From the IMG/VR virus record IMGVR_UViG_3300026521_000471, positions 160,468 through 224,467 of that record: a DNA stretch of 64,000 bases. One strand, 5' to 3'. Made by a program: the position numbers and the translations under genes. The notes beneath the pieces are model-generated. The model saw only the letters and a program-made list of their open reading frames with translations, ran no database searches and was not told where the DNA came from. Numbering within the stretch: position 1 is the stretch's first letter; the number at the start of each line of letters is the position of its first letter. Shown here piece by piece: positions 3,014-21,389 of this stretch.

Positions 3014-3017
3014 TAGG

Positions 3018-3025: not shown

Positions 3026-3053
3026 ATTATAAAATAATCTTAGGAGCAATAAA

Positions 3054-4345: not shown

Positions 4346-4372
4346 TTTGTATAATATATAAAAAGGATCAAA

Positions 4373-4639: not shown

Positions 4640-4647
4640 AATTTAAT

Positions 4648-5067: not shown

Positions 5068-5121
5068 TTTTTAAGTTTATTTCTTTTATAATTATGTATA
5101 AAATTATATAAGGAATATTAT

Positions 5122-6375: not shown

Positions 6376-6377
6376 AA

Positions 6378-7262
6378 ATGCTATTAACATTTGGAGGATA
6401 TGGTGGTGAATATTGCTGTGGTGAACTCAGTAAGCTTCATATTAACAATATAAAAGAACTACTTAGACGTTTTGAATACGAAGATATTATTGGACATTTC
6501 GATACAATTTTTAGTAGTAGTGGATGGGAAAGACAATATTATGATTTTGATGATATTGAACATATTTCTAGCTGTGCCATTGATGGTAGTATTTCTATTA
6601 ATCCTAATGAACGCGAACATACAAAGTATGATTCTATTAATATTAGTGATTTAACTATCAATATCAATGATGATGACTTTTTATCTGATGGTTGGTATAT
6701 TTCATCAGCTTCCATAGAAAAAGGTATTTTTTTTGAAGCAGAAATTTTAGATGATGTCAATGAATTTAATAAAGATTTACTGATCATAGATGCAAAAGAT
6801 ACAGATTATATTGGTACTGGAGACATTTTAGTTACTGATGTTTTTTACAATAATAAAGTCCTCGAAATGAACTATGATGTTATGGATACATTCGGTAAAG
6901 GTTTCTATCAAAGTATTTTTCATGTTAAAGATAGGATACATTATGACGGAAAGGAAAAACTCCTAGACGATTTTAAAAACTCTTTTAATATTATTGAAAT
7001 GGTTGGTATGGATCGTGAAGATATAATCTTTGAATATTTAGAATATGTAGAAGCTGCAAATAATAAGCATTTAATAAAAGATGATCGAATTATAGTTTGG
7101 GCTAGTCCATTCTTATATGAACATTTTGAAAAAGAAGATGTAGACCTTTTATGGATGACTGAAAAGAATATTAAATTCGCATTGAAAAATGGTTTAAAAG
7201 ATGAAATACCACCAAATATTTTTGAACGTATTATTATGAGGTTTCCAGAATGGCTAATTTAG
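6378..7262 (+). CDS. hypothetical acidic protein (C-terminal FPEWLI)
   Basis: 294-aa ORF in operon. Confidence 0.6.
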   Translation: MLLTFGGYGGEYCCGELSKLHINNIKELLRRFEYEDIIGHFDTIFSSSGWERQYYDFDDIEHISSCAIDGSISINPNEREHTKYDSINISDLTININDDDFLSDGWYISSASIEKGIFFEAEILDDVNEFNKDLLIIDAKDTDYIGTGDILVTDVFYNNKVLEMNYDVMDTFGKGFYQSIFHVKDRIHYDGKEKLLDDFKNSFNIIEMVGMDREDIIFEYLEYVEAANNKHLIKDDRIIVWASPFLYEHFEKEDVDLLWMTEKNIKFALKNGLKDEIPPNIFERIIMRFPEWLI

Positions 7263-7540
7263 TATATGGTATTACCATTGATAGAAAATTATTTCATGGC
7301 AAAATTATAAAATCCAGTTTGAAATCTATGATTTCTATTAAGACAGTTGATAATAGAATTTTAAATTTTCCTAAGTCTCATAAATTATTTAAAACAAAAG
7401 AAGAACGAGATATAGAAATTTTTTTAAATAATAATAATTTAAGCATAGATAAAGTTGCAGAGTTATATAATATTAACAAAAAAGAGGCAATTTTAGCTTA
7501 CCAATCAGCTATTAAAAAATTTCCCGAAAAATTTATATAA
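7250..7540 (+). CDS. hypothetical protein (C-terminal FPEKFI)
   Basis: Overlaps upstream gene. Confidence 0.55.
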   Translation: MANLVYGITIDRKLFHGKIIKSSLKSMISIKTVDNRILNFPKSHKLFKTKEERDIEIFLNNNNLSIDKVAELYNINKKEAILAYQSAIKKFPEKFI

Positions 7541-7549
7541 AGGATCATT

Positions 7550-8143
7550 GTGAATATTAAAAGCAATATAAAATCTAACATTAAAGGTAAATCCTTAATA
7601 AGAACAAAATCTTACATTATACCGACTACTGTAACATTTCTTATAGGTTGTTTTATATGGTTATTAGATGGTAGCTGGGGAGTATATTTAACATTTTTAA
7701 TTATAGGTATCATTACCCACTTTATTTATGTAGGTATAAATGAACATTCAAGATATAATCATGATCTGCATTGGGATAATGAAGCCTATTATAATTGGTT
7801 TGCCATTGTTGGTTTACCAATGATATTAATTGGTATTTTTTACCCATTTGCTATATCCCCAGCAATCCACGACTATTATCATGCAGAACGAATTGATGAA
7901 GAAATACCTATCGACAAAAATATTTCTCTTATGTACAATGACTACCATAGTACATTTATATTAATGGTTGAAGGAGAAAAACAACCTCTTCTAATTGATA
8001 AAGGTGGTTCTAGCGATACTTACAATCGTATGAAAGCTAGCTATCTTGATAAAAAAATAAAAGTAGTTAAAAAAAGATATAAATCTTGGACTGATGACGA
8101 AATTCAAACAGTTTATCAGTTAGATGGTTACACATTCAAATAA
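7550..8143 (+). CDS. membrane protein (about 3 TM)
   Basis: AAGGA RBS before GTG; hydrophobic segments. Confidence 0.6.
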   Translation: MNIKSNIKSNIKGKSLIRTKSYIIPTTVTFLIGCFIWLLDGSWGVYLTFLIIGIITHFIYVGINEHSRYNHDLHWDNEAYYNWFAIVGLPMILIGIFYPFAISPAIHDYYHAERIDEEIPIDKNISLMYNDYHSTFILMVEGEKQPLLIDKGGSSDTYNRMKASYLDKKIKVVKKRYKSWTDDEIQTVYQLDGYTFK

Positions 8144-8152
8144 AGGATTTTT

Positions 8153-10843
8153 ATGAATAAAATTAAAACACAAGTACATACTATAATAATGCTTATTGGA
8201 CCTAGTGGTTCTGGTAAAACAACATTCGCTAATGAAATTCTAATACCCACATTACAAGAATATAAAGGTAGTGGAAATGACAATTTAAAAACAAATATAC
8301 AATATATTAGTTCTGATGATATTAGAAAAGATATTTTAGGATATAATTATAGTAAAATAGATGAAATTATGACTGAAAGTTCAACACAAGCATTTGAAAT
8401 ATTATTTACAAAATTAAGAGCTGTTACTAGTTATCCAATCAATGCTGAATTTGTTATTTTAGATACAACTGGATTAAGTGAAAAATTTAGAAATGATGTT
8501 TTAGATATAGCAAAAGATAATAATTATAATGTCGATATTATAGTTTTCGATTATAAGAATATTGATGAATATCAGAAAAATTTTTCTGATGAAGTTTATC
8601 AACAACCTAGTACTAATGGCAAAATTATTTCTAAGCATATAAAAAGATTAAAAACAGAAACATTAAAAACATTAAAAAAAGGTGTATATAAAAATATTCA
8701 TAAAATTAAAAATAAAGATTTTCTTTTAGAAGTTGAACAGGAGAATCCATATGATTTAACACCTACTATGTTAAAACCTCTTTATAGTGTAGATGTATGG
8801 GATTGGAAAAAATATACTGATAGAATATTAAATAGTACTTATGATTGGATTACTATTGGTGATGTTCATGGATGTATTCATGAATTAAAACAATTACTTG
8901 AAAAATATGGTTTTATAATTGAAGACAATGAAATCATAGATACAAACAAAACAAAAAATATAGGATTGATTTTTGCAGGTGATTTAATTGATAAGTCGTC
9001 AGAAGAAGATTTAACTGAAACTATAAGATTTATACATAAAAATATGATAAAATTTCAAGATCGTTTTCAATTAATATTAGGTAATCATGAAGAGATGGTC
9101 TGGAAATGGATAACAAATCATAAAGATTTAGAAATTACTCCAGAACGATTGGATCAGAAAAAAAGATACTATAATACAGCAATTTTACTAGAGAAAAATG
9201 AAGAGTTAAAATCTATGTTTTTAGATATTTTTCATAATATGAAAGGTTGGGTTAAATTTATAGGATTAAACAAAAGAAGTTTTGTAGTTACACATGCACC
9301 ATGTGAGGTTAAATATCTCGAAAAAATGGATCGTATTTCATTAAAACGTCAATATAAATGCGCTAGTAGAAGTAAAAACAAAGATAAGACTAATGATGAA
9401 CTAACACCATATTTAAAAGAAGAAGCAGTTAATAACCATCCAGTTCACATATTTGGTCATATGGGACAATCATCTGTTAGATCTTTTAAAAATAAAGTTT
9501 GTATTGATACAGGCTGTGTATATGGTGGAAGATTAACTGGATACAGTATAGGATACGGTAAACCATTTATTCAAAGTGTAAAATCATTATCTCCTAAGAG
9601 TGCAAGAAACGACTTTGGAAATAATCTATTTGAAGATATAGGTAAAGCTATAAAAGAAGTATCTATTGAAGATTTAAATCCATACAACCAAAAAAGATTA
9701 GATTATATAGTAAAAAATGGCATAGGATACATAGGAGGTACAATTTCACCTTCAAATAAAAACATCGAAAAAAATTCACTAGAATCTTTAGATAGTGGAC
9801 TTAATTATTTCAAAGATAAAGTAGATAGTGTAGTTCTACAACCTAAATATATGGGGTCTAGAGCACAACTGTATCTCTTTAAAGATAATATTGAAAAATG
9901 CTATGCTACAAGTAGAAATGGATATAAAATTAGAGAGGACTTAACTGATTTATTCTCATCTAAATTAATAGAATACAAGCATATTTTTGATATGTATAAT
10001 GCTGATGAGATAATTATAGATGGTGAATTATTACCATGGGCTCTTTTAGGAAAAGGTTTGATAGAAACACATTTTAAAACTGCGGATATAGCTATCCAAA
10101 CAGAAATCGACTTTCTGGATGATAATGGGTTTGATAAGGCTTTTTTAAGTTTAAAGGATGAATTTAATGAATCAGAATTTTTAAAAGATAAAAATATTTT
10201 AGCTAAAAAAGAATTAGCTAAAAAATATGGTCACAAATATCACTCTTATAAAGATTTAAAATTTGAAATTGATAGATTCATACCTTTAAGTAAACACAAA
10301 AAAGCTTGGAAAATTTTCAATAAACAAATAACCCTTTATGGAGATGATACAAATACAGATTTTAAAGGTTTTAGATTATTAAAAGTAATATCAAATAACA
10401 ATATAATCGATTTGGATCTAACCCCTAGCGAACACTTTAAACTATTAAATTCAGATGATATTCATATTGTTGATTTCAATGATAAAGACTATTTAGTTAA
10501 AGCTGAAAGATGGTATGATGATTTAGTGAGTAATCAAAATATGGAAGGTTGTGTAATAAAACCGGAAGTAAAGTTATTAGAATCTTGGATTGCTCCATAT
10601 TTAAAAGTAAGAAATGAAGAATATCTTTCTATCATTTATGGGTATGATTATAAATTCCCTGTCAAATTTAATAGATTATTAAATCAAAAAAATATTTCTA
10701 AAAAATTAAGACTCTCTATATCAGAGTATAAATTAGGAGAAGAAATGCTTAAAGCTCCTATGGGTAGTAAAGAACAAATACAGATTATAGCCAATCTATT
10801 ATTTGAAAATGAAAAAGAAGAAAGCGTCGATCCAAGATTATAA
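8153..10843 (+). CDS. pnkp: bacterial-type Pnkp (kinase-phosphatase-ligase), partner of Hen1
   Basis: P-loop GPSGSGKT; metallophosphoesterase GDVHG, GDLID, GNHE; ligase KYMGSRA, DGELLPW, EGCVIKP; terminus VDPRL. Confidence 0.93.
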   Translation: MNKIKTQVHTIIMLIGPSGSGKTTFANEILIPTLQEYKGSGNDNLKTNIQYISSDDIRKDILGYNYSKIDEIMTESSTQAFEILFTKLRAVTSYPINAEFVILDTTGLSEKFRNDVLDIAKDNNYNVDIIVFDYKNIDEYQKNFSDEVYQQPSTNGKIISKHIKRLKTETLKTLKKGVYKNIHKIKNKDFLLEVEQENPYDLTPTMLKPLYSVDVWDWKKYTDRILNSTYDWITIGDVHGCIHELKQLLEKYGFIIEDNEIIDTNKTKNIGLIFAGDLIDKSSEEDLTETIRFIHKNMIKFQDRFQLILGNHEEMVWKWITNHKDLEITPERLDQKKRYYNTAILLEKNEELKSMFLDIFHNMKGWVKFIGLNKRSFVVTHAPCEVKYLEKMDRISLKRQYKCASRSKNKDKTNDELTPYLKEEAVNNHPVHIFGHMGQSSVRSFKNKVCIDTGCVYGGRLTGYSIGYGKPFIQSVKSLSPKSARNDFGNNLFEDIGKAIKEVSIEDLNPYNQKRLDYIVKNGIGYIGGTISPSNKNIEKNSLESLDSGLNYFKDKVDSVVLQPKYMGSRAQLYLFKDNIEKCYATSRNGYKIREDLTDLFSSKLIEYKHIFDMYNADEIIIDGELLPWALLGKGLIETHFKTADIAIQTEIDFLDDNGFDKAFLSLKDEFNESEFLKDKNILAKKELAKKYGHKYHSYKDLKFEIDRFIPLSKHKKAWKIFNKQITLYGDDTNTDFKGFRLLKVISNNNIIDLDLTPSEHFKLLNSDDIHIVDFNDKDYLVKAERWYDDLVSNQNMEGCVIKPEVKLLESWIAPYLKVRNEEYLSIIYGYDYKFPVKFNRLLNQKNISKKLRLSISEYKLGEEMLKAPMGSKEQIQIIANLLFENEKEESVDPRL

Positions 10844-11118
10844 TAGTATTTTTGTATAATTCTAATAAATAATTAGTCATATCGACAAAAGGAGATAATT
10901 ATGTTACATTCAATTAGTAGATCTTATTTAAATTTTATTCTTACTCGGATAGCATTTACGTAAATACATTTATTGAATCTTCTATAAAAAATATCTTTGA
11001 TTTAGGTGGTGATTTATGAGTTTAATAATCATCTCCTATATAATAAAATGGTATAAAAAGAAAAAATAGAAGTCAAATCACTATGGTAACATGATTTGTA
11101 TATTTATCGGATGAAATT

Positions 11119-11457
11119 TCATCTAATTTGATTATCATCCGATATTAAAGGGTTTACTCGATAACCTTTGTAAATTTTATTTTTTAACGAATCATTCACA
11201 CAAGCATCATACTTTTTTAAAAACTGATTTGATATTTCTAAATATCTATTTTGTAATTCATATGATTTTACATTATTAACTTTATTTAAAAAATTTATTA
11301 CTTCTTTTTTATATATTAAACATGAATCTTTAATATTTCTTTGATCAATTATAATTATTTTATTTTTGATATATGAAATCCCTTCAGATGCATTATACCA
11401 TTGATCATCAGCGTTTAAAAATATTATACTAATTAATATTATTAATATCTTTTGCAT
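11119..11457 (-). CDS. secreted/periplasmic protein
   Basis: Signal-peptide-like MQKILIILISIIFLNA; overlaps upstream TM gene. Confidence 0.55.
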   Translation of the reverse strand: MQKILIILISIIFLNADDQWYNASEGISYIKNKIIIIDQRNIKDSCLIYKKEVINFLNKVNNVKSYELQNRYLEISNQFLKKYDACVNDSLKNKIYKGYRVNPLISDDNQIR

Positions 11458-11822
11458 TGTTCAGTATCCTCCATTAATCTTTCTATCGGTTCCCATTTAG
11501 CATTTGTACTGATTTTTTTATATTTTTTCTTGAGAGATTGTAATATACTATAATTTTCTAAATACTCATCCCATTCCGTATCACTTACTGCACATGGATT
11601 ATGTTCAGAACGACGCACTATATCTTTCAATATCATCATTTGAGTAATCTCTATTCGTTCAGTATTTTCCGATATACTATCTAATATACCCTCATAACTA
11701 ATATACCCACCAATACCGACTGTAATAACAAAAGATAAAAATCCGTATAAGGCAACGACTGTATTCGTCATTTTATTAAATTTATCAAAAAATGAATTAT
11801 TATTTTCTTTATTTTTAGACAT
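11442..11822 (-). CDS. single-TM protein, late promoter
   Basis: N-terminal TM helix; TATAAATA at 11844-11851 (-). Confidence 0.6.
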   Translation of the reverse strand: MSKNKENNNSFFDKFNKMTNTVVALYGFLSFVITVGIGGYISYEGILDSISENTERIEITQMMILKDIVRRSEHNPCAVSDTEWDEYLENYSILQSLKKKYKKISTNAKWEPIERLMEDTEQCKRY

Positions 11823-11962
11823 TTTATTACCTCTATTTTTCTTTATTTATATTTAAGTATTTTTTTTGTATAATATAATATAAATAAAAACACACTTTGT
11901 GTATTATTAAAACTGTTATTGGATCTAACACAAGTTAGAATGAATAACTAAGGAGAACTAAT

Positions 11963-12601
11963 ATGAAAAAAATACTTATAGTAGTAGACTACCAATTTGA
12001 CTTTGCTAGCCCAACAGGGGCTCTATCAGTACCCAATGCTGATAAAATAGTTGATAACATCCAATCTTATATCAATGATAAATCGTATGAAAATATAATT
12101 TATACTTTTGATACTCATACATCTGATAAATATAATGGTTCTGATGAATCTAAAATTTTTCCTTCAATTCATTGTGAATTTGGAACAATCGGTTGGAATT
12201 TTTATAAAATTAAACCCAGATATAAAAATTGGGATAATTTTATTGCAAATCGTGGAATCGATGAAGGTACAGTACCTTTTAACACCTTTATAGTTGAATC
12301 GGAAATGTTTTTTACAAAAGATGTTTTTGATATTTGGCAAGGAAATTCAATCTTTAAATCTATTTTTACAAATACCTTTAAACCAAAGGACACAATTATA
12401 GACATTGTAGGTGTAGCTACAAATTACTGCGTATTTATGAATGTTATGGGTCTAGTAAAAAATGGTTATACAGTTAATGTTCTTTCAGATGCTGTTGAAG
12501 GGATTAAATCATTTCCAGATGGATCAATAGATGATAGTTTTCAAACAAATATCAATGTTATGAAAAATAAAGGTGTAACTTTTTCTGGAGACATAAAATG
12601 A
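11963..12601 (+). CDS. pncA: nicotinamidase (isochorismatase family)
   Basis: VVDYQFDF..GALSVP, DTH, HC..GT.GW, GVATNYCV. Confidence 0.88.
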   Translation: MKKILIVVDYQFDFASPTGALSVPNADKIVDNIQSYINDKSYENIIYTFDTHTSDKYNGSDESKIFPSIHCEFGTIGWNFYKIKPRYKNWDNFIANRGIDEGTVPFNTFIVESEMFFTKDVFDIWQGNSIFKSIFTNTFKPKDTIIDIVGVATNYCVFMNVMGLVKNGYTVNVLSDAVEGIKSFPDGSIDDSFQTNINVMKNKGVTFSGDIK

Positions 12602-13494
12602 TTATGAAAGTAATAGAAAGTTCAGAAGAGAATGTTTGGAAATATATTTTTAATGATAATGAAATAGTTTTGGAAAGTGTATTATATAAATACGGTTCAT
12701 TCGATAAAAGAACTGTTATTTGTTGTTCTGTACAAAGTGGTTGTCCGGTTGGATGTACATTTTGTGGAACAGGTGCAAATTTCTTAAAAAATATTTCATC
12801 AGATCAAATAGTTGAGCAAATAACAACTATTTTTAAAGATAAAAATATCGAGGATATAAACAGTAGATGTGAAAAGCTTCAAATAATGTTTATGAGTATG
12901 GGTGAACCATTTCTTAATTACAAAAATGTTAAAGAAGCAATAATTAAATTGAATAAATTATACCCTAATGCCGACTTATTAATATCTACTGTTGGTATTA
13001 ATGATGATAAAATTTTTAAAGATTTTATTTCATTATCTAAAATGATTAAAAAAGTTGGTTTACAATTTAGTATTCATAAATCAAATGATACAGATAGAGA
13101 TAAATTAATACCCTTTAAAAAGAAATATACACTTAGGGAAATCAGAGATAGAGGTACTATTTGGCATAAAGAAACAGGGAGACAAGTATATCTCAACTAC
13201 TGTGTTGATGGTACAAATAATAGTCAAAATGATATTGAGAATCTTAAGAATCTCTTTTCTCCAATTATTTTTAATATGACATTTAGTGTTATTTGTGAAG
13301 CAGATGAAACAATGAAAGATAGTTCATGTAGAAATTTGAATACGATTAGAGATTTTGAAAAATCTTTTATTGAAGAAGGGTATAATACCAGAATATTTGA
13401 TCCTGCTGGACAGGACGATATTGGTGGAGGATGTGGCCAATTATGGTTCGTTCAAGATTATCTTAAAAATAAAAAAATGAAAGCAGAGGTATAA
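12598..13494 (+). CDS. RlmN/Cfr-family radical SAM RNA methyltransferase-like
   Basis: SVQSGCPVGCTFCGTG, MSMGEPFLN, DIGGGCGQL. Confidence 0.85.
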   Translation: MIMKVIESSEENVWKYIFNDNEIVLESVLYKYGSFDKRTVICCSVQSGCPVGCTFCGTGANFLKNISSDQIVEQITTIFKDKNIEDINSRCEKLQIMFMSMGEPFLNYKNVKEAIIKLNKLYPNADLLISTVGINDDKIFKDFISLSKMIKKVGLQFSIHKSNDTDRDKLIPFKKKYTLREIRDRGTIWHKETGRQVYLNYCVDGTNNSQNDIENLKNLFSPIIFNMTFSVICEADETMKDSSCRNLNTIRDFEKSFIEEGYNTRIFDPAGQDDIGGGCGQLWFVQDYLKNKKMKAEV

Positions 13495-13498
13495 AATT

Positions 13499-14452
13499 AT
13501 GGAAAAAATAGAAACACTAACCGATATGGTAGAAGTAATCAGAGAAATAAAAACACCGACAAGTCAAAAAGCTAATATGGTTGTAGGAAATATTAGAGCA
13601 CAAATTAAAAATTACGTACAACGTAATAATCTTAAATCACTTGTAGTAGGTGTGAGTGGGGGTCTTGATTCAGCTGTTGTAGCGGCTCTTTGTCAAGAAG
13701 AATTTACAGGAGTACCTCTAATTGGTCTTTCTATTCCTATGAGTTCAACTAACGCTCACAAAGAACAGGCAGAATGGGTAGGTAATACCTTTTGTACGGC
13801 TTTTGAAGAATTCAACTATTGGGATGAAACTTTTCAGTACAATGAAGAAGAAGGTACTGATATGATGAGTGAAGTATTTAATACCGTTTCAGCAACAGAT
13901 AAAGTTGCTGAAAAAGCAGGATTTAAAACGGAAGATTTTCCAAAAAATGTTCTTCAAGGTAATATTAAAGCGAGGCTTAGAATGATAACTCTTTATGACC
14001 TTGCAAGAAAAACAAACGGTATGGTTCTTTCAACAGATAACCTTTCTGAATTTCAAATGGGATTTTGGACTATTTGTGGTGATGTAGGTGATTTTGGACC
14101 TATCCAAAATGTTGGTAAGGGGTTTGAGCTTCCAGCCATAGCAAGAGCTCTTGGAATAAGAGCAGATATTATCACTCAATCGCCTAGTGATGGACTAATG
14201 GTAACTGAAGAAAATACAGATGAGGCTCAACTTGGAGCTAATTATGAGGAAGTTGATACTATTATGAGTATTTATCTTGGCAATATCAATAAACCAAAAG
14301 AAATTATAGATAAACTTAAAAGTAACCTATTTAATATTATTAATGATAAAAAGAGTGCTAAGAAAATTTCAAATGTAATTACACGTTATGAAAATTCACA
14401 CTTTAAACGTAATGGTACAATCAACCTTACAAGAGAACAGATCGGAATCTAA
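13499..14452 (+). CDS. nadE: NH3-dependent NAD+ synthetase
   Basis: GVSGGLDSAV, GNIKARLRM, STDNLSE, GFWTICGD, PSDGL, DEAQLG. Confidence 0.93.
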   Translation: MEKIETLTDMVEVIREIKTPTSQKANMVVGNIRAQIKNYVQRNNLKSLVVGVSGGLDSAVVAALCQEEFTGVPLIGLSIPMSSTNAHKEQAEWVGNTFCTAFEEFNYWDETFQYNEEEGTDMMSEVFNTVSATDKVAEKAGFKTEDFPKNVLQGNIKARLRMITLYDLARKTNGMVLSTDNLSEFQMGFWTICGDVGDFGPIQNVGKGFELPAIARALGIRADIITQSPSDGLMVTEENTDEAQLGANYEEVDTIMSIYLGNINKPKEIIDKLKSNLFNIINDKKSAKKISNVITRYENSHFKRNGTINLTREQIGI

Positions 14453-14477
14453 ATTCCGATCAAAAAAAAGGATATTT

Positions 14478-14822
14478 ATGGTTTACCGTTCTAAAGCTGA
14501 TTTAGAGGAAATTAGAAAGTCACAAAATAATATTAAATTATATGCTGTATATTCACATCTTGCATTACCCGTATTTAAAATCAAATCATTAAGTAAAAAA
14601 TATGTATATTGGGAAGATAATTCAAAACATCCATATCCTAGTAATTCAGCAGGTTATATATTAACAGACAATTTATATGAAGGTTGGAAAATATATAAAG
14701 ATACTTATAATAAACGGAAAAAATTTATTGAAGACCAATATAAATCAGAAATACAAAAATTAACAATGGCAGAATCTATACTAGATTCTCTTTCAAAATC
14801 AAATCCAGAACTTTTTATCTGA
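14478..14822 (+). CDS. hypothetical protein (C-terminal NPELFI)
   Basis: AAGGA RBS before ATG 14478 (track start 14388). Confidence 0.6.
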   Translation: MVYRSKADLEEIRKSQNNIKLYAVYSHLALPVFKIKSLSKKYVYWEDNSKHPYPSNSAGYILTDNLYEGWKIYKDTYNKRKKFIEDQYKSEIQKLTMAESILDSLSKSNPELFI

Positions 14823-14851
14823 TTTTAAGTATAATTCCATTATAATCCACT

Positions 14852-15172
14852 ATGTTAAATAATTTAAAATTAAAGTTCATTTATACATTTATCAATTTTA
14901 AAATACAAAGGGTAGGACATATGTTAAATCTCAAAATAGATCCAGATAATAAATCCATAAAATTATCTATTTTATTACTTGGTGAAGATGAACCATTAGA
15001 TATAGATATTAAATCTTATGAACTAATAGAAGAAAATAATAAATCTTATATAAAAATAAATGATGTAGAAACTAGTAAAACATGGATGAATATCCTAATA
15101 TTAGAATTTGTTGAAAATAATAAGATAGAAATTTCAAATAAAATTTCAAAACTATTGAAAATAATTATATAA
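14852..15172 (+). CDS. hypothetical protein
   Basis: 106-aa ORF. Confidence 0.55.
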   Translation: MLNNLKLKFIYTFINFKIQRVGHMLNLKIDPDNKSIKLSILLLGEDEPLDIDIKSYELIEENNKSYIKINDVETSKTWMNILILEFVENNKIEISNKISKLLKIII

Positions 15173-15185
15173 AAAAGGACATAGC

Positions 15186-15389
15186 ATGACACATAATGAA
15201 TTAACAAAATTAAATAATTTAGTAGAAAACCTAAATACAAAATTTAATGAAAATAAAACATTAGAGGGTTTTATACGTTTTACGAAAAAAATTAATATGG
15301 TTGAGACAGTTTCATTTAAACAAGTTAAGTATGAGATTGATTTAATGTATGAACGTCTTTTAGAAGAACAAGAAGAAAATACATGGTAA
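15186..15389 (+). CDS. hypothetical protein
   Basis: AAGGA RBS. Confidence 0.55.
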   Translation: MTHNELTKLNNLVENLNTKFNENKTLEGFIRFTKKINMVETVSFKQVKYEIDLMYERLLEEQEENTW

Positions 15390-15398
15390 AGGATAACT

Positions 15399-16538
15399 AT
15401 GAAAAAAAGTATGAGAGAAGAATCTTTAGGAACTAGACTTAAAGGTTATGAAAGAGAGTTTGAATCAGTAATCGATCCAAAGGATTTTATTATTTGTAGA
15501 ATTGATGGACATAAATTTAGCAAATATACAAAAGGTATGAAAAAACCATTTGATAAAATGTTGTCAAATACAATGGAGGAAACTACTAAAGACCTTGTTG
15601 AAAAATTTGGAGCCGTAACGGGCTATACGCAATCTGATGAAATTTCATTGGTTTTTGTCCCTCAATTCAAAGAAAGATTAATACCTATTGAAACCAAAGA
15701 ATTATTTGTTCTTAATGATGAAGAAGCAACCTATAAAGTTTATGACAAAGAATACAACTTGCTAGGTTCATTAGATATTAGTTATGAAGATATGGATGAT
15801 GAATATTTCAGTATTAACTTTTGGGTAGTTTCTGATACTAATGATGAAATTATCGATCAATGTTCTTGGCAAAATAGAAACTCTAAAACTGAGGCTAAAG
15901 CATTAGAAACGCTTTTAAAGTATATCATTAAGAAAGTTGAAATAACAAATGAGCAAATTTTTGGAGGAAGAGTTCAGAAATTAACTTCTTTGATTGCGGC
16001 ATATACTACTATGCAGTTTAATAAACACTTTTCTAAATTTTTAGAAAAAACATACGAAGATTATGAAGAAAAATTAGAAAAGGGCGAAATCGATACGAAT
16101 AGTTTAGAGGCCATGAAATACCTTAAAACAATGGATGAAAAAGTAGGTAATGCTTGGTTTGATGCTAGAGTTTATGGCGTATCATCTAAAGAAGAAGCAT
16201 TTAACAGTATTATGTGGCGAATTCGTGATGCCGAGAAGAACTCTAGATCAATGTTTGCACAGACATACTGCTCTCATAAATCGCTATTAGGAAAAAATGG
16301 TCTTGAACAGGTTGAATACTGTAAAGAAACTACTGGTAAAGATTGGGAAGAAGTTGAAGATAAATACAAATATGGCATTTTAGTTAAAAAAGAAAAATAT
16401 CTTAAACCTATTTCTGAAGGGACTATGGATTATGCTCAAAATGATTTTGTAGAAAGATCCAGAATTATTAGTTGGGCTGAAAAAATTACTACTTTCTCTG
16501 GTGAAAAAGTTGAAATGGTTGTTAGGAAATATAAATGA
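15399..16538 (+). CDS. Thg1-like 3'-5' nucleotidyltransferase (tRNA-His guanylyltransferase family)
   Basis: RIDGHKFSKYT, KPFD, YTQSDEISL, FGGRVQKL, FDARV, WRIRDAEKNS. Confidence 0.9.
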   Translation: MKKSMREESLGTRLKGYEREFESVIDPKDFIICRIDGHKFSKYTKGMKKPFDKMLSNTMEETTKDLVEKFGAVTGYTQSDEISLVFVPQFKERLIPIETKELFVLNDEEATYKVYDKEYNLLGSLDISYEDMDDEYFSINFWVVSDTNDEIIDQCSWQNRNSKTEAKALETLLKYIIKKVEITNEQIFGGRVQKLTSLIAAYTTMQFNKHFSKFLEKTYEDYEEKLEKGEIDTNSLEAMKYLKTMDEKVGNAWFDARVYGVSSKEEAFNSIMWRIRDAEKNSRSMFAQTYCSHKSLLGKNGLEQVEYCKETTGKDWEEVEDKYKYGILVKKEKYLKPISEGTMDYAQNDFVERSRIISWAEKITTFSGEKVEMVVRKYK

Positions 16539-16801
16539 TTTCTAATCCTCCAGAAGATTTAGTAGAGGTTGTGAAACTTCTACTAACAGATAATCTTAAA
16601 GATTTTAAACCTTTAGATGATTTTATTAAAACAGATGAAAATGATTTGATAAAATATCATTTTAGTTTGGGTATGGAGTTAAGAAATCATTATAGTTTAT
16701 GGACGAAAAGATTCGAAGATAAAAATGGCTTTGAAATTCATCCAGATGACGTATCATTTGAATTTATAAAATATGCTCATACACAATTAAAAATTAATTA
16801 G
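16535..16801 (+). CDS. conserved hypothetical protein
   Basis: YHFSLGMELRNHYSLW..HPDDVS motif. Confidence 0.6.
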   Translation: MISNPPEDLVEVVKLLLTDNLKDFKPLDDFIKTDENDLIKYHFSLGMELRNHYSLWTKRFEDKNGFEIHPDDVSFEFIKYAHTQLKIN

Positions 16802-16809
16802 GAAAATTT

Positions 16810-17238
16810 ATGAAACCTACGTCTATTGGAATTATTCCCTATCGGTTTTCTGAAAACGGGGTATCTATTCTTTTAATGCGGTCTTCTAAGAAAAATGATA
16901 GATTCGATTTTGTTAAAGGTAAGATAGAACCTTATGAAACTAGAGTAGACTGTTGTTTACGAGAAGTTCAGGAAGAAATAGGTGTTTCACTTTCCAAAGA
17001 AGATTTAGACTTTTCTGTTAAGCAATACAATAAGAAGAAAAATATTGAATTATTCTTTATTCATTGGGATAAATATTTGTATAAGCAATTTAAATTAGAT
17101 GAACGAGAAGTTTTTGAACTAAAATGGTTTAATTTGAATGAAATACCTACAATTTCTCAGAACCAACGTTTGATTATTACGAAAATAAATGAAAGATTTA
17201 ACAAATTACATCAACTACTAAGGAGTAACTATGTTTGA
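16810..17238 (+). CDS. Nudix hydrolase
   Basis: KGKIEPYETRVDCCLREVQEEIG Nudix box. Confidence 0.88.
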   Translation: MKPTSIGIIPYRFSENGVSILLMRSSKKNDRFDFVKGKIEPYETRVDCCLREVQEEIGVSLSKEDLDFSVKQYNKKKNIELFFIHWDKYLYKQFKLDEREVFELKWFNLNEIPTISQNQRLIITKINERFNKLHQLLRSNYV

Positions 17239-17376
17239 TGAATTAAAAATTACTTGTCTTAAAACTGGCGAATTTAAAATACTTAATATATGGGAAAGTA
17301 GACTATCTATTCATGACCTCAATATTATAACATTGTTTTACAAAAATCATAAAGATTTTACTATTGAAGTTGTTGA

Positions 17377-17898
17377 ATGAACGCCTTGTTCTTAGATATT
17401 GATGGAGTTTTAAATAATTACCATCTTAAAGAACCATTTACTTTTCCAAACGGTTATACACAGCAACCAGTTAAAGGCACTCAAAATAAATGGAATGGTT
17501 TAATGGGTATGGATTATGATAAAGTTAATTTATTAAATGAAATACTTGAAAGTAACGAGTGGAAAGTAATAATATCAAGCTCTTGGTATTATTCGGATAG
17601 TACTGTTAATGCGTTAAAACATTTTGGTTTTAAATATTCAGATAGAATTATTGGTGGTACAAATAGAAAATCATATGGTAGAGGAAAACAAATCCTAGAT
17701 GCTGTTGAAGATTTTAAAGTAACAGATTTTATTATTTTAGATGATGAACTATTTGATATTACTGGAAACTCTGAATTTGTTAGTAATAATATGCGAGAAA
17801 TATTTAGAGATAGAGTGTTTAAAACAAATCCATACATAGGTTTAACTGAAAAGACAGTCTCTAATATTTTAAAAAGATTAGACTATTTTATAATTTAA
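17377..17898 (+). CDS. HAD phosphatase of the Swiss-Army-knife RNA-repair type
   Basis: LFLDIDGVLN, VIISSSW, RG.QI, FIILDD. Confidence 0.8.
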   Translation: MNALFLDIDGVLNNYHLKEPFTFPNGYTQQPVKGTQNKWNGLMGMDYDKVNLLNEILESNEWKVIISSSWYYSDSTVNALKHFGFKYSDRIIGGTNRKSYGRGKQILDAVEDFKVTDFIILDDELFDITGNSEFVSNNMREIFRDRVFKTNPYIGLTEKTVSNILKRLDYFII

Positions 17899-17900
17899 GG

Positions 17901-17908
17901 TATAAATA
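17901..17908 (+). promoter_or_regulatory. T4-type late promoter
   Basis: TATAAATA before GGAG RBS/ATG 17937. Confidence 0.55.
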
Positions 17909-17936
17909 TATTAAAAATAGAATATGGAGAATATTT

Positions 17937-18191
17937 ATGAAATTTTCAACAGTAAAAGAAATGGAAGAGACATTGAAAAAAATTAAATCAAAAAAAGAAT
18001 TATCTCAAGATATATCATTTAGAAGTCAAGGTGAAGAAATTTTTCTTGAATTTATAGGTGAAGGAACAAGACAAAATCTTAAAGATATGATATGGATAGG
18101 TAGAGAAACAGCAGATAATCTAAGGATTTCATTTGATGATAATGGCGATGATTCAATTAATATCCTAGAATATTCTTTAAATAGAGGATAA
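17937..18191 (+). CDS. hypothetical protein
   Basis: GGAG RBS, late promoter. Confidence 0.6.
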   Translation: MKFSTVKEMEETLKKIKSKKELSQDISFRSQGEEIFLEFIGEGTRQNLKDMIWIGRETADNLRISFDDNGDDSINILEYSLNRG

Positions 18192-18195
18192 TAAA

Positions 18196-19347
18196 ATGCG
18201 AGTTGATAATATCTTAATAAAAACAGAGTATGGAGATATAGAAATCTCAGGAAGAGTAGATAGCGGTGAATTTATTCCAGATGATTTAGATATTTCAACG
18301 GAATTAGGTGAATTTTTAGGAAAATGGATTGAAGCTGGAAATTTATTTTTTTCAGATAATGAAATTGATATGGTCGGTCAAGATATTGATGATGATTTAA
18401 TCGATGAATTAAAAAATTTCGTTACATTGAGTGATTTTTCAGATCCTATGAGAGCATTAGCTTTACATCAACATACAGGATACGATTTTACAAATATTGA
18501 TGAAGATAGAAACCCATACACATTTACATCTGGAAGAGAAGAATATATGGTTTTGACCGATGATGAAGCTGATGAAATGGCTAAAGAACGGGTTGAAAAT
18601 TTATTAGATGATGTAGGATTTGATGGATTTAGTGATTGGGCTAAAGATCATGCATTAGATAATTTTATTGATACTGATTGGTTTGACGATGCAAAAATTG
18701 AAATGAGTATGAGCTATGCTGAAGATATTAAACACGAGGGTGCAAATTCGGATGAATACATTAATAGACTACATGAAGAAATGGTAGAATTAGGTGTTCT
18801 TTTTGAACCGGAATGGCCTGAAGAACCAGATGAATCAGATTATACCTATGAAAGAGAGGAATTTGATAGTTCAGATTTTTATGATAATGAACCAGTAGAA
18901 GATGATTATGAAACTGAAGAAGAATGGGAAGAAGCACATAGTAAATGGGAAGATGATTTATCAAATGCTGAAAAAGAATGGGAAGAAGAACAAGACCGTT
19001 TAGAAGAAGAAGCTCAAGAAGAATATGACGATGCGATTGAAGCTTGGGAACGTGAAAAAGAAGAATATGAATCAGATTTAGAAAATGATATAGATAATAA
19101 TATTGAAGAGTTTGCTGAAAAACGTGTAGAAGATGAAGACGGCATCGAATATTGGAAAAATAATATTGGTGATATTTCCGATGTAGTAAAAGAACAAGGT
19201 TTATTAGACGAAGACGCTTTTATAGAATGGATTGTTGAAACTGATGGTAGAGGTACTAATATTGCAACTTATGATGAGGCGGAGTACGAAGAAACTGTAA
19301 CCTTAAATGGTGAAACTGAAGATTTTTATATTTACAGAACCGAATAA
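18196..19347 (+). CDS. extremely acidic protein, function unknown
   Basis: D/E-dominated 383-aa ORF. Confidence 0.7.
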   Translation: MRVDNILIKTEYGDIEISGRVDSGEFIPDDLDISTELGEFLGKWIEAGNLFFSDNEIDMVGQDIDDDLIDELKNFVTLSDFSDPMRALALHQHTGYDFTNIDEDRNPYTFTSGREEYMVLTDDEADEMAKERVENLLDDVGFDGFSDWAKDHALDNFIDTDWFDDAKIEMSMSYAEDIKHEGANSDEYINRLHEEMVELGVLFEPEWPEEPDESDYTYEREEFDSSDFYDNEPVEDDYETEEEWEEAHSKWEDDLSNAEKEWEEEQDRLEEEAQEEYDDAIEAWEREKEEYESDLENDIDNNIEEFAEKRVEDEDGIEYWKNNIGDISDVVKEQGLLDEDAFIEWIVETDGRGTNIATYDEAEYEETVTLNGETEDFYIYRTE

Positions 19348-19417
19348 ATTACCACTTTATATTTTTTTAAGACTCTTTTAGATATAATTATTATATATTA
19401 AATAAAGGGGTCTTAAA

Positions 19418-20821
19418 ATGGCTTTATTAACTTACGATGAAGTATTAGAAATCACAAAAATAAATGAAACTTTTAAAATGAAACACCAAAAAATAGGTAA
19501 CACAGAAATTGCAATGTGTACTTATTTTTTAGCAAATGCAGGTGATTTTTTTGATGCAAAATTAGATGGCTCTATGGTTAGAGCCACAGAATTAAGAGGT
19601 ATAACATTTGTAAAAGCTCCAAATTCAGACTGGAAAACATATTTGTTTATCGATAAATTTTTTAATATCGGTCAAACAAATGGAACTAATATAACAAATA
19701 TGGAACTTTCTATCAATGACTCAACTGAAATTTGTAATATTAATAAACTTTTTATCGATGAAAATGAGAAAACATATCGTGCAATAGATTTAAAGTTAAA
19801 TATGATTGTTGCTGAATTTGATAGAAATACTGAAACTCATGGGGATTTTTTTCAAATTTTATCACTAGATAAAAAAGTTTTACCTACATTGAAACCTGAA
19901 AATTCTTGGATGTATGAGGATGTAAAAGATTTAGAAATTGTAAGAATTGCAAATAAAGAAGATGGATCCGCAATAAGATTTCTTTTAATTGAAGGAAAAT
20001 TAGTGGCTAAAACAAAATTTTCTTTTGAATCAGAACAATGCAAATTAGCTATGGAAATAGTTGAAAAAGATCCTAAACTTAAAGCATTTATTTTAACAAC
20101 TTTAGAGTTTGGATATGCAGCAATTTTTGAAATAGTTTCACCATTTAATAAAATCGTTTTAACATATCCAGAAACATCTCTTAGATTGTTGCAACTAAGA
20201 GATGAAAATAATGATGGGTTATATCTAAATATATATGATAATACATTAGTAAAAGCATTTAATATCTTGACTGCCAATCAAGAACCTTTATACACACTTG
20301 ATGAGTTACTTAAATTAAAAGAAACCGTTGAAGATAAAGAAGGTTGGGTAATTACATTTGAAAATGGAAAAATGGCAAAGGTAAAAACTGATTGGTATAT
20401 GTCACTTCATGGTATTTTAACTGATGGGTTAAAAGAACATAAAATAATTGAAAAGGTTTTAGACGAAACGATTGATGATACTATAGCAATGATACCAGAA
20501 GAAAATATTGAAGAACGAGATTTTATTGATGGTATCTCTGAAATTATAATTAATCATGTAAATCATTTAGTGTCAGATGCAGAAGCTAAATTTAAAAATT
20601 CATGGAATGGAAATAAAAAAGAGTTAGCACTAAAATTTAAGGATGATAAACGTGCTTTTCCATATATAATGAGTTTTGCAAATGGAAAAAATATTGAAGA
20701 AATTGAAAAACAAGTTATAGATAGAGTTAAATTTGAATGTAGACGTTTAGAAATGGCTAAACAATACCTTAAAAATTTAGGTTTTGACAAAGAACTCGAA
20801 ATAAAAATTGAGGATGATTAA
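19418..20821 (+). CDS. T4 Rnl1-type RNA ligase
   Basis: ELRGITF, KFFN, motif I KEDGS, FEIVSPFNKIV, EGWV, KVKTDWY. Confidence 0.9.
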   Translation: MALLTYDEVLEITKINETFKMKHQKIGNTEIAMCTYFLANAGDFFDAKLDGSMVRATELRGITFVKAPNSDWKTYLFIDKFFNIGQTNGTNITNMELSINDSTEICNINKLFIDENEKTYRAIDLKLNMIVAEFDRNTETHGDFFQILSLDKKVLPTLKPENSWMYEDVKDLEIVRIANKEDGSAIRFLLIEGKLVAKTKFSFESEQCKLAMEIVEKDPKLKAFILTTLEFGYAAIFEIVSPFNKIVLTYPETSLRLLQLRDENNDGLYLNIYDNTLVKAFNILTANQEPLYTLDELLKLKETVEDKEGWVITFENGKMAKVKTDWYMSLHGILTDGLKEHKIIEKVLDETIDDTIAMIPEENIEERDFIDGISEIIINHVNHLVSDAEAKFKNSWNGNKKELALKFKDDKRAFPYIMSFANGKNIEEIEKQVIDRVKFECRRLEMAKQYLKNLGFDKELEIKIEDD

Positions 20822-20823
20822 TC

Positions 20824-20991
20824 ATGAAATACGGTTTTAGTTTATTTGAATTAATTATTGTAGTTGTAATATTGGGAATTCTAGCAGCAGTTGCTATTCC
20901 TAGATTATCAAATTCTTCATCAAATAATGATAAAATTTCATACAAAAAAATAATTTTTACTAATGGTGATGGTGGATCCGCCGAGAATTGA
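20824..20991 (+). CDS. 55-aa type IV prepilin-like peptide (not in ORF track)
   Basis: MKYG|FSLFELIIVVVILGILAAVAIP N-methylation motif; GAGG RBS at end of ligase gene. Confidence 0.75.
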   Translation: MKYGFSLFELIIVVVILGILAAVAIPRLSNSSSNNDKISYKKIIFTNGDGGSAEN

Positions 20992-21351
20992 ACTCGGGTC
21001 TGCCACTACTTCCATTTAAATCTCATTTACAAGTTTAGTTTGATTTTTAATACTTTAATACTTAGATAACCAAACAAATCGGTATTAAAGGCACTTGATA
21101 TAATTTTCGTCTAAAGGTATCAAGTTTAACTTTAGCTTATCTATTTTTTATTATACACTCTGTATTTATTAGTAAATAGACAACTAATAAACTGAGTGAT
21201 TCCGGGCTCCCAGAGGGAGGATTAAGCAGCTACTCTCGCAGTCTGTGGAATATAAAGTTTTGTGTTTGCATTTAAGCTTTTTTGATGATTAAGTCATCAC
21301 TCTACTTGCAATTTAAATTTCTTATAGCAACATCGATCCCAATTCGGACCC
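20970..21351 (-). ncRNA. ssrA: tmRNA, 382 nt, tag (A)ANTKLYIPQTARVAA*
   Basis: 5' GGGUCCG pairs with 3' CGGAUCC-ACCA with G3.U wobble; T-arm CCGAG-UUCAAUU-CUCGG; tag ORF 21269-21222 ends AA-stop. Confidence 0.96.
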
Positions 21352-21358
21352 ATAAAAA

Positions 21359-21389
21359 ATATCAGTATATAGAAATTATATACTGATAT
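21359..21389. terminator. hairpin just upstream of tmRNA 5' end
   Basis: atatcagtatat / atatactgatat stem followed by T6 on the minus strand. Confidence 0.5.

What the first reader, a model, noticed from the sequence alone, without database searches (positions are those of the whole stretch)
11963..14452. pncA - radical SAM - nadE operon: candidate deamidating NAD+ reconstitution route
Seen: nicotinamidase and NAD synthetase flanking an RlmN-like gene, tightly coupled; two Nudix enzymes and a sirtuin lie elsewhere in the window. Known: phage NARP1 (Adps+Namat) and NARP2 (Nampt+Nmnat) rebuild NAD+ after TIR/SIR2 defences by amidated routes, whereas PncA+NadE belong to the Preiss-Handler-type route and need PncB and NadD/NadM. 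Inference: a third type of phage NAD-restoring pathway. PncA would also remove the sirtuin inhibitor nicotinamide. PncB and NadD are not in this window.
Basis: partly seen in the sequence, partly recalled or inferred. Interest (0 to 1): 0.65.

Follow-up and report, generated by a model that had tools for sequence, protein, structure and literature searches.

The report
Phage nicotinamide-to-NAD salvage genes
A 224-kb phage carries three of the four enzymes that turn nicotinamide back into NAD+ by the deamidated route, two of them flanking an RNA-methylase-like gene; this route is already reported in large phages, but the repeated pairing of that methylase with NAD genes appears unreported.

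Summary
Window 11963-14452 holds three tightly coupled + strand genes: a nicotinamidase-like protein (PncA), an N-terminally truncated RlmN/Cfr-like radical SAM protein, and an NH3-type NAD+ synthetase (NadE).

- The phage also encodes a divergent nicotinate phosphoribosyltransferase (PncB) about 57 kb upstream, outside the window. A Pfam search missed it. It is conserved in the closest relative.
- No NadD was found in the 224 kb held (CheckV 85% complete), so a host adenylyltransferase is needed.
- Related phage contigs carry a compact PncA-PncB-NadE-NadD(-Nudix-HAD) module. The window holds a split, reduced version of it.
- Preiss-Handler genes in jumbo phages were already reported in 2024, and "NARP3" now names PnuC+NadR. 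This is therefore not a new "third type". No paper in the searched library tests it as a counter-defence.

One result was unexpected. The RlmN-like gene directly abuts NAD salvage genes of three different kinds in separate phage lineages, and a fourth kind (PnuC-NadR) lies six genes away. It also occurs in many phages without such genes. The trio sits in an RNA-repair island (Pnkp/Hen1, Thg1, Rnl1, tmRNA/SmpB, Ro60). Most likely this is a co-expressed island that counters abortive infection.

The parts
11846..11874 (+). promoter-like site (TTTATA-17-TATAAT) in the 140-nt divergent intergenic region upstream of PncA
   Evidence: Consensus scan. The number of such sites in the region does not exceed shuffles, so this is weak evidence. 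An AAGGAG ribosome site lies at 11950-11955.
11963..12601 (+). PncA-like nicotinamidase (212 aa)
   Evidence: Pfam Isochorismatase 54.3 bits. All PDB sequence hits are nicotinamidases or close isochorismatase-family kin. AF2 model with pLDDT 80 and pTM 0.83; the top 24 Foldseek PDB hits are all nicotinamidases. D9, D50, H52, H70 and C156 are invariant in 10 phage homologues. dN/dS 0.17.
12598..13494 (+). N-terminally truncated RlmN/Cfr-like class A radical SAM methylase (298 aa)
   Evidence: TIGR00048 RlmN 1e-35, matching profile positions 73-342 of 355. PDB RlmN 6fz6 3.5e-20 and Cfr 9p0p. CX3CX2C and both mechanistic cysteines are invariant in 28 homologues. More than 120 clusters at 60-99% identity. 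dN/dS 0.11.
13499..14452 (+). NH3-type NAD+ synthetase NadE (317 aa, no glutaminase domain)
   Evidence: Pfam NAD_synthase 148 bits; TIGR00552 142.8 bits (cut-off 63.65). PP-loop SGGLDS at residues 53-58 is invariant. Best PDB hits are short NH3-dependent NadEs, 3fiu first. dN/dS 0.20.
16810..17238 (+). Nudix hydrolase, homologous to the Nudix that follows NadD in the canonical phage module
   Evidence: Pfam NUDIX 7e-16. A module Nudix is present in 13 of 23 NadE lineages. The profile built from module Nudix proteins hits this ORF at 7.9e-5.
17377..17898 (+). HAD_SAK_2 phosphatase-like protein, homologous to the HAD at the end of the canonical phage module
   Evidence: Pfam HAD_SAK_2 2e-18. 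Present in 8 of 23 NadE lineages. The module profile hits this ORF at 3.7e-16.
44668..45246 (-). YffH/AdpP-family Nudix (ADP-ribose pyrophosphatase type); context, a possible ADPR recycler
   Evidence: TIGR00052 92 bits (cut-off 79.55).
49766..50611 (+). CobB-like sirtuin; context, an NAD+ consumer
   Evidence: PF02146 5e-26. NF001753 136.8 bits, below its cut-off of 243.
2564..23169 (.). surrounding RNA-repair and translation-rescue island: SmpB 2564-3013, Hen1 5122-6375, Pnkp 8153-10843, Thg1-like 15399-16538, Rnl1-like ligase 19418-20821, tmRNA 20970-21351 (-), Ro60/TROVE 21670-23169

Best explanation
The three genes are real and co-transcribed, and they belong to two functional sets that share one island. 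PncA deamidates nicotinamide to nicotinate. A divergent phage PncB, 57 kb upstream and outside the window, makes nicotinate mononucleotide. An adenylyltransferase makes deamido-NAD; NadD was not found in the phage DNA held, so the host enzyme is presumed. The phage NH3-type NadE then amidates deamido-NAD to NAD+. This is a split, reduced version of a compact phage module, PncA-PncB-NadE-NadD(-Nudix-HAD), seen in related large phages. Its likely use is to rebuild NAD+ from nicotinamide during infection. That would serve two purposes: it would counter NAD+-cleaving abortive-infection defences, and it would feed the phage's own NAD+ users (a LigA-type adenylation-domain protein and a sirtuin). 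The RlmN-like gene sits in the slot that PncB holds in the canonical module. It is most likely an RNA adenine C-methylase of the neighbouring RNA-repair set, co-expressed as part of an island that counters abortive infection. Shown here: gene identities, active-site residues, synteny, selection and distribution. Inferred: every enzyme activity, the use of host NadD, and any counter-defence role.
For: Gene identities and residues. Phage PncB: found by tblastn; NAPRTase_N 33.1 bits (cut-off 32.6) and NF006696 at 1.8e-50; best PDB hit is E. faecalis NAPRTase 2f7f; the motifs TDFYQ, RRA, GTSN, GTMAHA and IDTYD align. It is conserved and syntenic in the 221.5-kb relative at 90% identity with dN/dS 0.08. 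Canonical module: among 23 dereplicated NadE lineages in IMG/VR, PncB occurs in 20, PncA in 19, NadD in 18, Nudix in 13 and HAD_SAK_2 in 8, in a conserved order. Module PncB and NadE score above curated cut-offs, as does the L094 NadD. The window keeps the order PncA ... NadE ... Nudix ... HAD_SAK_2. Phage NAD+ users: a LigA adenylation-domain protein and Sir2. RNA-repair island. The same trio occurs in two close relatives. In a 496-kb relative PncA and NadE stay together while the RlmN-like gene lies 2.4 kb away.
Against: No NadD or NMNAT was found in the 224 kb held. The only HIGH-motif nucleotidyltransferase resembles TagD/RfaE, and 15% of the genome is unsampled. PncA and PncB score far below the NCBIfam equivalog cut-offs. 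The catalytic lysine of PncA is placed by inference at K119, not at the position that standard alignments give. The host is unknown; SmpB similarity to Clostridia is only a weak hint. The RlmN-like gene abuts NAD genes too often for a simple passenger.
Confidence: 0.6

Rival explanations
1. The genes are a metabolic supply line only. They raise NAD+ for the phage's own NAD+-using enzymes (LigA-type protein, sirtuin) and for general metabolism in a large phage, with no specific role against NADase defences.
For: The phage encodes NAD+ users. NadE alone is common in cyanophages and pelagiphages, where a metabolic role is usually assumed. The 2024 survey frames such genes as independent NAD+ synthesis.
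Against: The route starts from nicotinamide, which is the product of NADase defences. The set lies in an island of RNA-repair genes that answer abortive-infection nucleases. An ADPR-pyrophosphatase-type Nudix is also encoded. The two roles are not exclusive.
Confidence: 0.3
2. The RlmN-like radical SAM enzyme is a working partner of phage NAD+ pathways. It might methylate an adenine nucleotide related to NAD+ or ADP-ribose, or an RNA whose damage or capping depends on NAD+. On this reading the trio is a true three-enzyme operon.
For: Of 52 dereplicated lineages, 7 have the RlmN-like gene directly next to an NAD gene, 9 have one within two genes, and 14 have one within 10 kb. Seven direct-abutting arrangements were seen: five next to Nampt-family genes, with NadM-Nudix or with Prs-like genes, and two Preiss-Handler, several with 4-nt overlaps; PnuC-NadR lies 6 genes away in one lineage. 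Where a viral record has both genes, they lie within 10 kb in 10 of 16 records, against about 2.4 expected (binomial 2e-5, lineages not fully independent). NAD-adjacent genes are scattered over the RlmN-like tree. The RNA-binding N-terminal domain of RlmN is missing.
Against: Only 4 of the 16 RlmN-like viral records at 90% or higher completeness have any PF04095 gene, although that model missed this phage's own PncB. RNA-repair genes are equally frequent neighbours, in 14 of 52 lineages. In the 496-kb relative the gene is not inside the NAD pair. No small-molecule substrate is known for this enzyme class (established knowledge).
Confidence: 0.15
3. The enzymes do something other than the standard steps. 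The PncA-like protein may be another amidohydrolase of the isochorismatase family, or NadE may act as an NMN synthetase (NaMN to NMN, as in Francisella).
For: PncA scores 48.7 bits against the 174-bit equivalog cut-off and has an unusual 80-118 segment. The best PDB hit of NadE is 3fiu, which I recall as the Francisella NMN synthetase (the identification is from memory). In phage Phass-1 a gene annotated as nicotinamidase sits beside a Prs-like plus Nampt-like pair, where removing nicotinamide would seem counterproductive.
Against: The nicotinamidase-type metal ligands and nucleophile are invariant, and nicotinamidases outrank all other isochorismatase-fold structures. 3fiu scores only marginally better than ordinary NadEs. 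Either order of amidation still needs an adenylyltransferase. In 18 of 23 lineages NadE sits next to a NadD-type enzyme.
Confidence: 0.1

Closest known systems
Preiss-Handler gene clusters of gut 'NAD-jumbo phages' (Microbiome 2024, PMC11662467)
   Same: Large phages encode pncB, nadD and nadE as clusters, and pncA is mentioned. The IMG/VR module found here, PncA-PncB-NadE-NadD, is the same kind.
   Different: In the window's phage the set is split. PncA and NadE flank a radical SAM gene, a divergent PncB of the ~450-aa type lies 57 kb away, and no NadD was found. The 2024 work is a metagenomic survey, without tests against defence systems.
NARP2 (Nampt + Nmnat) phage NAD+ reconstitution
   Same: It starts from nicotinamide, uses a type II phosphoribosyltransferase and PRPP, and ends in NAD+. 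It is proven to counter NADase defences.
   Different: NARP2 stays amidated and needs two enzymes. Here nicotinamide is first deamidated and the amide is restored last, which takes four steps and more ATP. No Nampt or Nmnat is in this genome.
NARP1 (Adps + Namat) and NARP3 (PnuC + NadR)
   Same: They are phage operons that restore NAD+, and the RlmN-like gene is found next to or near such gene pairs in other phages.
   Different: No Prs-like gene and no PnuC or NadR are in this genome, and the chemistry differs. NARP3 already holds the name of the 'third' pathway.
Bacterial pyridine nucleotide cycle / Preiss-Handler salvage (PncA, PncB, NadD, NadE)
   Same: The same four reactions, and the same enzyme families and key residues.
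   Different: The genes are phage-encoded, divergent (below equivalog cut-offs for PncA and PncB), and incomplete without NadD.
RlmN / Cfr class A radical SAM RNA methylases
   Same: The CX3CX2C cluster motif and both mechanistic cysteines are conserved, and RlmN and Cfr are the best matches.
   Different: About 70 N-terminal residues of the RlmN profile are missing and the score is below the curated cut-off. The family is phage-borne and very conserved (68% mean column identity) and lies next to NAD-salvage or RNA-repair genes.

Membership tests
Nicotinamidase (PncA) | Isochorismatase-like fold, closest to nicotinamidases | tested here: met
   Pfam PF00857 54.3 bits, cut-off 27. AF2 model with pLDDT 80; Foldseek PDB ranks 1-24 are all nicotinamidases/pyrazinamidases.
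Nicotinamidase (PncA) | Catalytic Asp-Lys-Cys triad | tested here: inconclusive
   D9 and C156 align with the catalytic residues and are invariant. Standard alignments put S113 at the lysine position. K119, in the conserved FFTKDVFDIW segment at the end of strand 114-117, fits the isochorismatase K-x-x-aromatic spacing, but this placement is inferred.
Nicotinamidase (PncA) | Asp-His-His metal site | tested here: met
   D50, H52 and H70 align with D52, H54 and H71 of the P. horikoshii enzyme (numbering from memory) and are invariant in 10 phage homologues.
Nicotinamidase (PncA) | Curated equivalog score (NF008623) | tested here: not met
   48.7 bits against a cut-off of 174.
NH3-dependent NAD+ synthetase (NadE) | Family score above the curated cut-off, and a PP-loop SGGxDS motif | tested here: met
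   TIGR00552 142.8 bits, cut-off 63.65. SGGLDS at residues 53-58 is invariant.
NH3-dependent NAD+ synthetase (NadE) | Single domain without a glutaminase (CN-hydrolase) domain | tested here: met
   317 aa with only the NAD_synthase domain.
NH3-dependent NAD+ synthetase (NadE) | Substrate NaAD rather than NaMN | not testable with these tools
   The best PDB hit 3fiu and ordinary NadEs score alike. Enzyme kinetics are needed.
RlmN/Cfr radical SAM methylase | CX3CX2C cluster and the two mechanistic cysteines | tested here: met
   C42/C43, C49, C53, C56 and C279 are invariant in 28 homologues and align with RlmN.
RlmN/Cfr radical SAM methylase | N-terminal accessory (RNA-binding) domain, and the curated equivalog score | tested here: not met
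   The match covers profile positions 73-342 of 355. The score is 123.3 bits against a cut-off of 290.
Nicotinate phosphoribosyltransferase (PncB), encoded outside the window | NAPRTase N-terminal and catalytic domains with conserved motifs, including the GT-x-AH histidine | tested here: met
   NAPRTase_N 33.1 bits, cut-off 32.6; NF006696 at 1.8e-50 but 172 bits against a cut-off of 503. The motifs align with 2f7f and with a bona fide phage PncB. PF04095 itself gave no hit.
Complete Preiss-Handler route from nicotinamide | All four enzymes present: PncA, PncB, NadD and NadE | tested here: not met
   NadD is absent from the 224 kb held. TIGR00482 gave no match at E<=1. A profile of 51 phage NadDs gave a best E of 0.004, on a TagD-like protein. 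The genome is 85% complete.
NARP1 | Adps (Prs-like) plus Namat (Nampt-like) | tested here: not met
   No PF13793 match. The PncB-like protein scores only 26.6 bits to the phage Nampt PHROG.
NARP2 | Nampt plus Nmnat | tested here: not met
   No Nampt. The only cytidylyltransferase-like protein is TagD/RfaE-like and fused to a cupin.
NARP3 | PnuC plus NadR | tested here: not met
   phmmer and tblastn with a phage PnuC and a phage NadR found nothing. Only single seeds were used, so this is a weaker test.

The most novel reading that the evidence does not exclude
Two linked claims. First, the phage Preiss-Handler set (here PncA, a remote PncB and NadE working with host NadD; elsewhere the full PncA-PncB-NadE-NadD-Nudix-HAD module) is a genuine fourth NAD+ reconstitution route against NADase defences. 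Second, the truncated RlmN/Cfr-like radical SAM enzyme, which abuts NARP1-like, NARP2-like and Preiss-Handler operons in separate lineages, is a functional accessory of NAD+ reconstitution or a new counter-defence enzyme, not a housekeeping rRNA methylase.
Probability: 0.2. Interest if true: 0.8.

Novelty: new variant of a known kind. Interest (0 to 1): 0.5.

Why it matters
NAD+ depletion is a common end point of bacterial anti-phage defence. Three phage routes that rebuild NAD+ have been proven experimentally, and none of them uses the deamidated route. If the PncA/PncB/NadE set restores NAD+ during infection, it adds a fourth route. That route would be immune to anything aimed at Nampt-type enzymes, and it shows that a phage can keep only part of a pathway and lean on an essential host enzyme.

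The recurring placement of one conserved radical SAM gene beside non-homologous NAD+ pathways gives a concrete and cheap experiment: run each pathway with and without the radical SAM gene. The result could reveal a new enzyme function or a new counter-defence.

Tried and rejected
- A single-protein scan of viral contigs with the RlmN-like protein found nothing. An alignment was needed.
- The Pfam PF04095 search of the phage genome was a false negative for PncB. tblastn with a phage PncB found it.
- The cytidylyltransferase-like plus cupin protein at G000:72817-73527 was considered as NadD/NMNAT. I rejected it because its best matches are TagD, RfaE domain II and the heptose adenylyltransferase PHROG.
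- The PncB-like protein was considered as Namat of NARP1. I rejected this because there is no Prs-like gene, the match to the phage Nampt PHROG is weak, and its PDB relatives are NAPRTases.
- An NAD+-dependent RNA 2'-phosphotransferase (Tpt1) or a Macro domain was considered as the link between RNA repair and NAD+. Neither is present.
The cluster look-up showed that this was wrong.
There is therefore no read-level or expression evidence, and read laying was not used.
- Rfam found only the tmRNA, and no Y RNA beside Ro60.
- No complex prediction was run, because I do not claim that PncA and NadE bind each other.
Full report
SETTING. The window is the last 64 kb of a 224,467-bp IMG/VR virus record (G000:C1:160468-224467; CheckV 85% complete). 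G+C is about 27%. rIIA and rIIB homologues and a ribonucleotide reductase subunit confirm a large phage.

OBSERVATION.
- The first stop and the second start overlap in ATGA.
- Four bases separate the second stop from the third start.
- AGGAG-type ribosome sites precede the first and third genes.
- A promoter-like site lies in the divergent intergenic region upstream. Such sites are no more frequent here than in shuffled sequence.
- Against a relative with 89-91% identical proteins, dN/dS is 0.17, 0.11 and 0.20, so all three genes are maintained.

THE THREE PROTEINS.

(1) PncA-like protein.
- It matches Pfam Isochorismatase, and its only NCBIfam hit is nicotinamidase, at 48.7 bits against a 174-bit cut-off.
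- All its PDB sequence hits are nicotinamidases or close kin.
- An AlphaFold2 model (pLDDT 80, pTM 0.83) has nicotinamidases as its first 24 Foldseek matches, ahead of every other isochorismatase-fold enzyme.
- D9, the metal ligands D50, H52 and H70, and the nucleophile C156 are invariant across ten phage homologues.
- The catalytic lysine is the weak point. Standard alignments place a serine there. I assign K119, in a conserved FFTKDVFDIW segment at the end of a predicted strand, by analogy with the K-x-x-aromatic spacing of isochorismatases. This is inference.

(2) Radical SAM protein.
- It matches RlmN (1e-35) and Cfr, but only from profile position 73 onward. The N-terminal accessory domain is therefore missing and the score is below the curated cut-off.
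- The cluster motif and both mechanistic cysteines are invariant.

(3) NadE.
- It passes the curated nadE cut-off, has the PP-loop SGGLDS, and has no glutaminase domain.

THE REST OF THE ROUTE.
- A Pfam NAPRTase search of the whole genome found nothing.
- tblastn with a PncB from a related phage then hit G000:114641-116005, a 454-aa ORF.
- This ORF passes the Pfam NAPRTase_N cut-off and hits eight NCBIfam nicotinate phosphoribosyltransferase models (best 1.8e-50, below cut-offs).
- Its PDB relatives are the E. faecalis and human NAPRTases, and it keeps the family motifs, including the GT-x-AH histidine.
- It belongs to a family of about 450-aa proteins found on contigs of up to 431 kb.
- In the closest relative it is 90% identical, lies at the same distance from the trio beside the same GGDEF and RlaP genes, and has dN/dS 0.08.
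- No Prs-like gene is present, so this is not NARP1.
- NadD was sought four ways and not found. The only HIGH-motif transferase resembles TagD/RfaE and is fused to a cupin.
- The phage therefore encodes three of four steps. From established knowledge, NadD is nearly universal in bacteria, so host supply is plausible. The missing 15% of the genome could also hold it.

RELATIVES.
- A census of the NadE clade in IMG/VR gave 82 relatives, 80 loci and 23 lineages at 80% identity.
- Among those lineages, PncB is present in 20, PncA in 19, NadD in 18, Nudix in 13 and HAD_SAK_2 in 8.
- The usual order is PncA-PncB-NadE-NadD-Nudix-HAD.
- Module PncB and NadE, and one NadD, score above curated cut-offs.
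- The window keeps the order PncA, NadE, Nudix, HAD_SAK_2. The RlmN-like gene sits in the PncB slot, and a Thg1-like gene and small ORFs are inserted.
- In a 496-kb relative PncA and NadE are separated by two small ORFs, and the RlmN-like gene lies 2.4 kb downstream.

LITERATURE.
- NARP3 is now PnuC+NadR.
- A 2024 survey of gut jumbo phages already reports Preiss-Handler clusters (pncB-nadD-nadE) and phage pncA.
- NadE alone is annotated in cyanophages, a pelagiphage and other cultured phages. PncA-like genes occur in Atu_ph07, Phosso and Phass-1.
- I found no paper in the searched library that tests this route against NADase defences.

THE RLMN-LIKE GENE. This family is large and unusually conserved. 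More than 120 clusters share 60-99% identity, mean column identity is 68%, and 247 relatives occur in IMG/VR. It also occurs in cultured Stenotrophomonas, Xanthomonas, Aeromonas, Salmonella and Vibrio phages.

Neighbours within 10 kb in 52 dereplicated lineages:
- NAD salvage genes occur in 14 lineages and RNA-repair genes in 14, with both in 8.
- The single commonest neighbour is a Nampt (NAMPT_N plus NAPRTase domains), in 8 lineages. It is often accompanied by a NadM-Nudix fusion, which makes a NARP2-like pair.
- Two lineages, and the cultured Vibrio phage 496E54-1, have a Prs-like plus Nampt-family pair, which is NARP1-like.
- Five lineages have Preiss-Handler genes, and one has PnuC-NadR.
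- I counted seven arrangements in which the gene directly abuts an NAD gene, several with 4-nt overlaps.

Genome-wide picture:
- Where a viral record holds both the RlmN-like gene and a PF04095 gene, they lie within 10 kb in 10 of 16 records. About 2.4 would be expected (binomial 2e-5, with the caveat that lineages are related).
- On a tree of 56 RlmN-like proteins the NAD-adjacent genes are scattered: 5 NARP2-adjacent rows need 5 changes, and 3 NARP1-adjacent rows need 3.
- Against a strict dependence, only 4 of the 16 RlmN-like records that are at least 90% complete have any PF04095 gene. That model can miss divergent PncBs.
- No paper in the library mentions radical SAM together with NARP1. 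The 2021 jumbo-phage review mentions neither RlmN nor radical SAM.

SURROUNDINGS. The trio lies in a + strand array with SmpB, Hen1, Pnkp, a Thg1-like protein, Nudix, HAD_SAK_2, an Rnl1-like ligase, a tmRNA and a Ro60/TROVE protein. No Tpt1 or Macro domain links RNA repair to NAD+ chemistry. NAD+ users in the phage are a 304-aa protein with only the LigA adenylation domain, just upstream of the window, and a CobB-like sirtuin. A YffH/AdpP-type Nudix could recycle ADP-ribose.

MECHANISM AND VERDICT. The best reading is a split, NadD-less Preiss-Handler salvage set that rebuilds NAD+ from nicotinamide with help from the host. It is housed in an island of genes that answer abortive-infection damage, namely RNA cleavage and NAD+ loss. 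The RlmN-like gene is most simply a co-expressed RNA methylase of that island. Its repeated operon-level pairing with non-homologous NAD+ pathways is not explained by this and deserves a test.

Gene identities, residues, synteny, distribution and selection are shown here. Every activity, the use of host NadD and any counter-defence effect are inferred. The finding is a new variant of a known kind, and the pathway idea itself is not new. The host is unknown; the phage SmpB is 45-52% identical to those of gut and rumen Clostridia, which is only a hint.

Noticed in passing
window 12598-13494; loci L068, L073, L052, L046, L059, L084, L037, L012; L262:3222-6915 (Vibrio phage 496E54-1): The truncated RlmN/Cfr-like radical SAM gene directly abuts NARP2-like (NadM-Nudix + Nampt), NARP1-like (Prs-like + Nampt-family) and Preiss-Handler genes in separate, phylogenetically scattered phage lineages, and PnuC-NadR lies six genes away in one more. 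I found no report of this in the searched library.
   Followed up: partly
window 2564-23169: A large RNA-repair and translation-rescue island: SmpB, Hen1-Pnkp pair, Thg1-like protein with DUF6794, Nudix, HAD_SAK_2, Rnl1-like ligase, a phage tmRNA (tag ANTKLYIPQTARVAA) and a Ro60/TROVE protein. Rfam detected no Y RNA beside Ro60.
   Followed up: partly
G000:C1:114641-117691 (outside the window; L095:4642-7692): The divergent PncB-like gene is followed by a GGDEF diguanylate-cyclase-like gene and an RlaP nucleotidyltransferase. The same trio is conserved in the closest relative. In another phage a homologue lies near NADAR, Prs-like and nucleoside deoxyribosyltransferase genes (L177).
   Followed up: partly
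L179:8998-12100 (Phage Phass-1, human gut): A gene annotated as nicotinamidase sits directly upstream of a Prs-like plus Nampt-like (NARP1-like) pair. A true nicotinamidase there would remove the substrate of that pathway, so this isochorismatase-family protein may do something else.
   Followed up: no
window 43518-44678 (+) and 50612-51832 (-): Two Rep3-type (plasmid-like) replication initiator genes in a phage that also has rIIA (38109-40235 -) and rIIB (51950-53074 +) homologues.
   Followed up: no
G000:C1:157358-158272 (L096:2359-3273), 2.2 kb upstream of the window: A 304-aa protein that holds only the adenylation domain of NAD+-dependent DNA ligase, next to a dCTP-deaminase-like gene. 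It is a possible NAD+ consumer of unknown substrate.
   Followed up: no
window 18196-19347: A 383-aa protein with an extremely acidic, Asp/Glu-rich C-terminal half and no family match. It is conserved in the close relative and lies between HAD_SAK_2 and the RNA ligase.
   Followed up: no
L073:9971-10918 and L073:14686-15534: One viral contig carries two copies of the RlmN-like gene within 5 kb.
   Followed up: no
L135:9259-9951 and equivalents: A 230-aa P-loop (ABC-ATPase-like) ORF recurs between PncB and NadE in several canonical phage modules. Its role is unknown.
   Followed up: no
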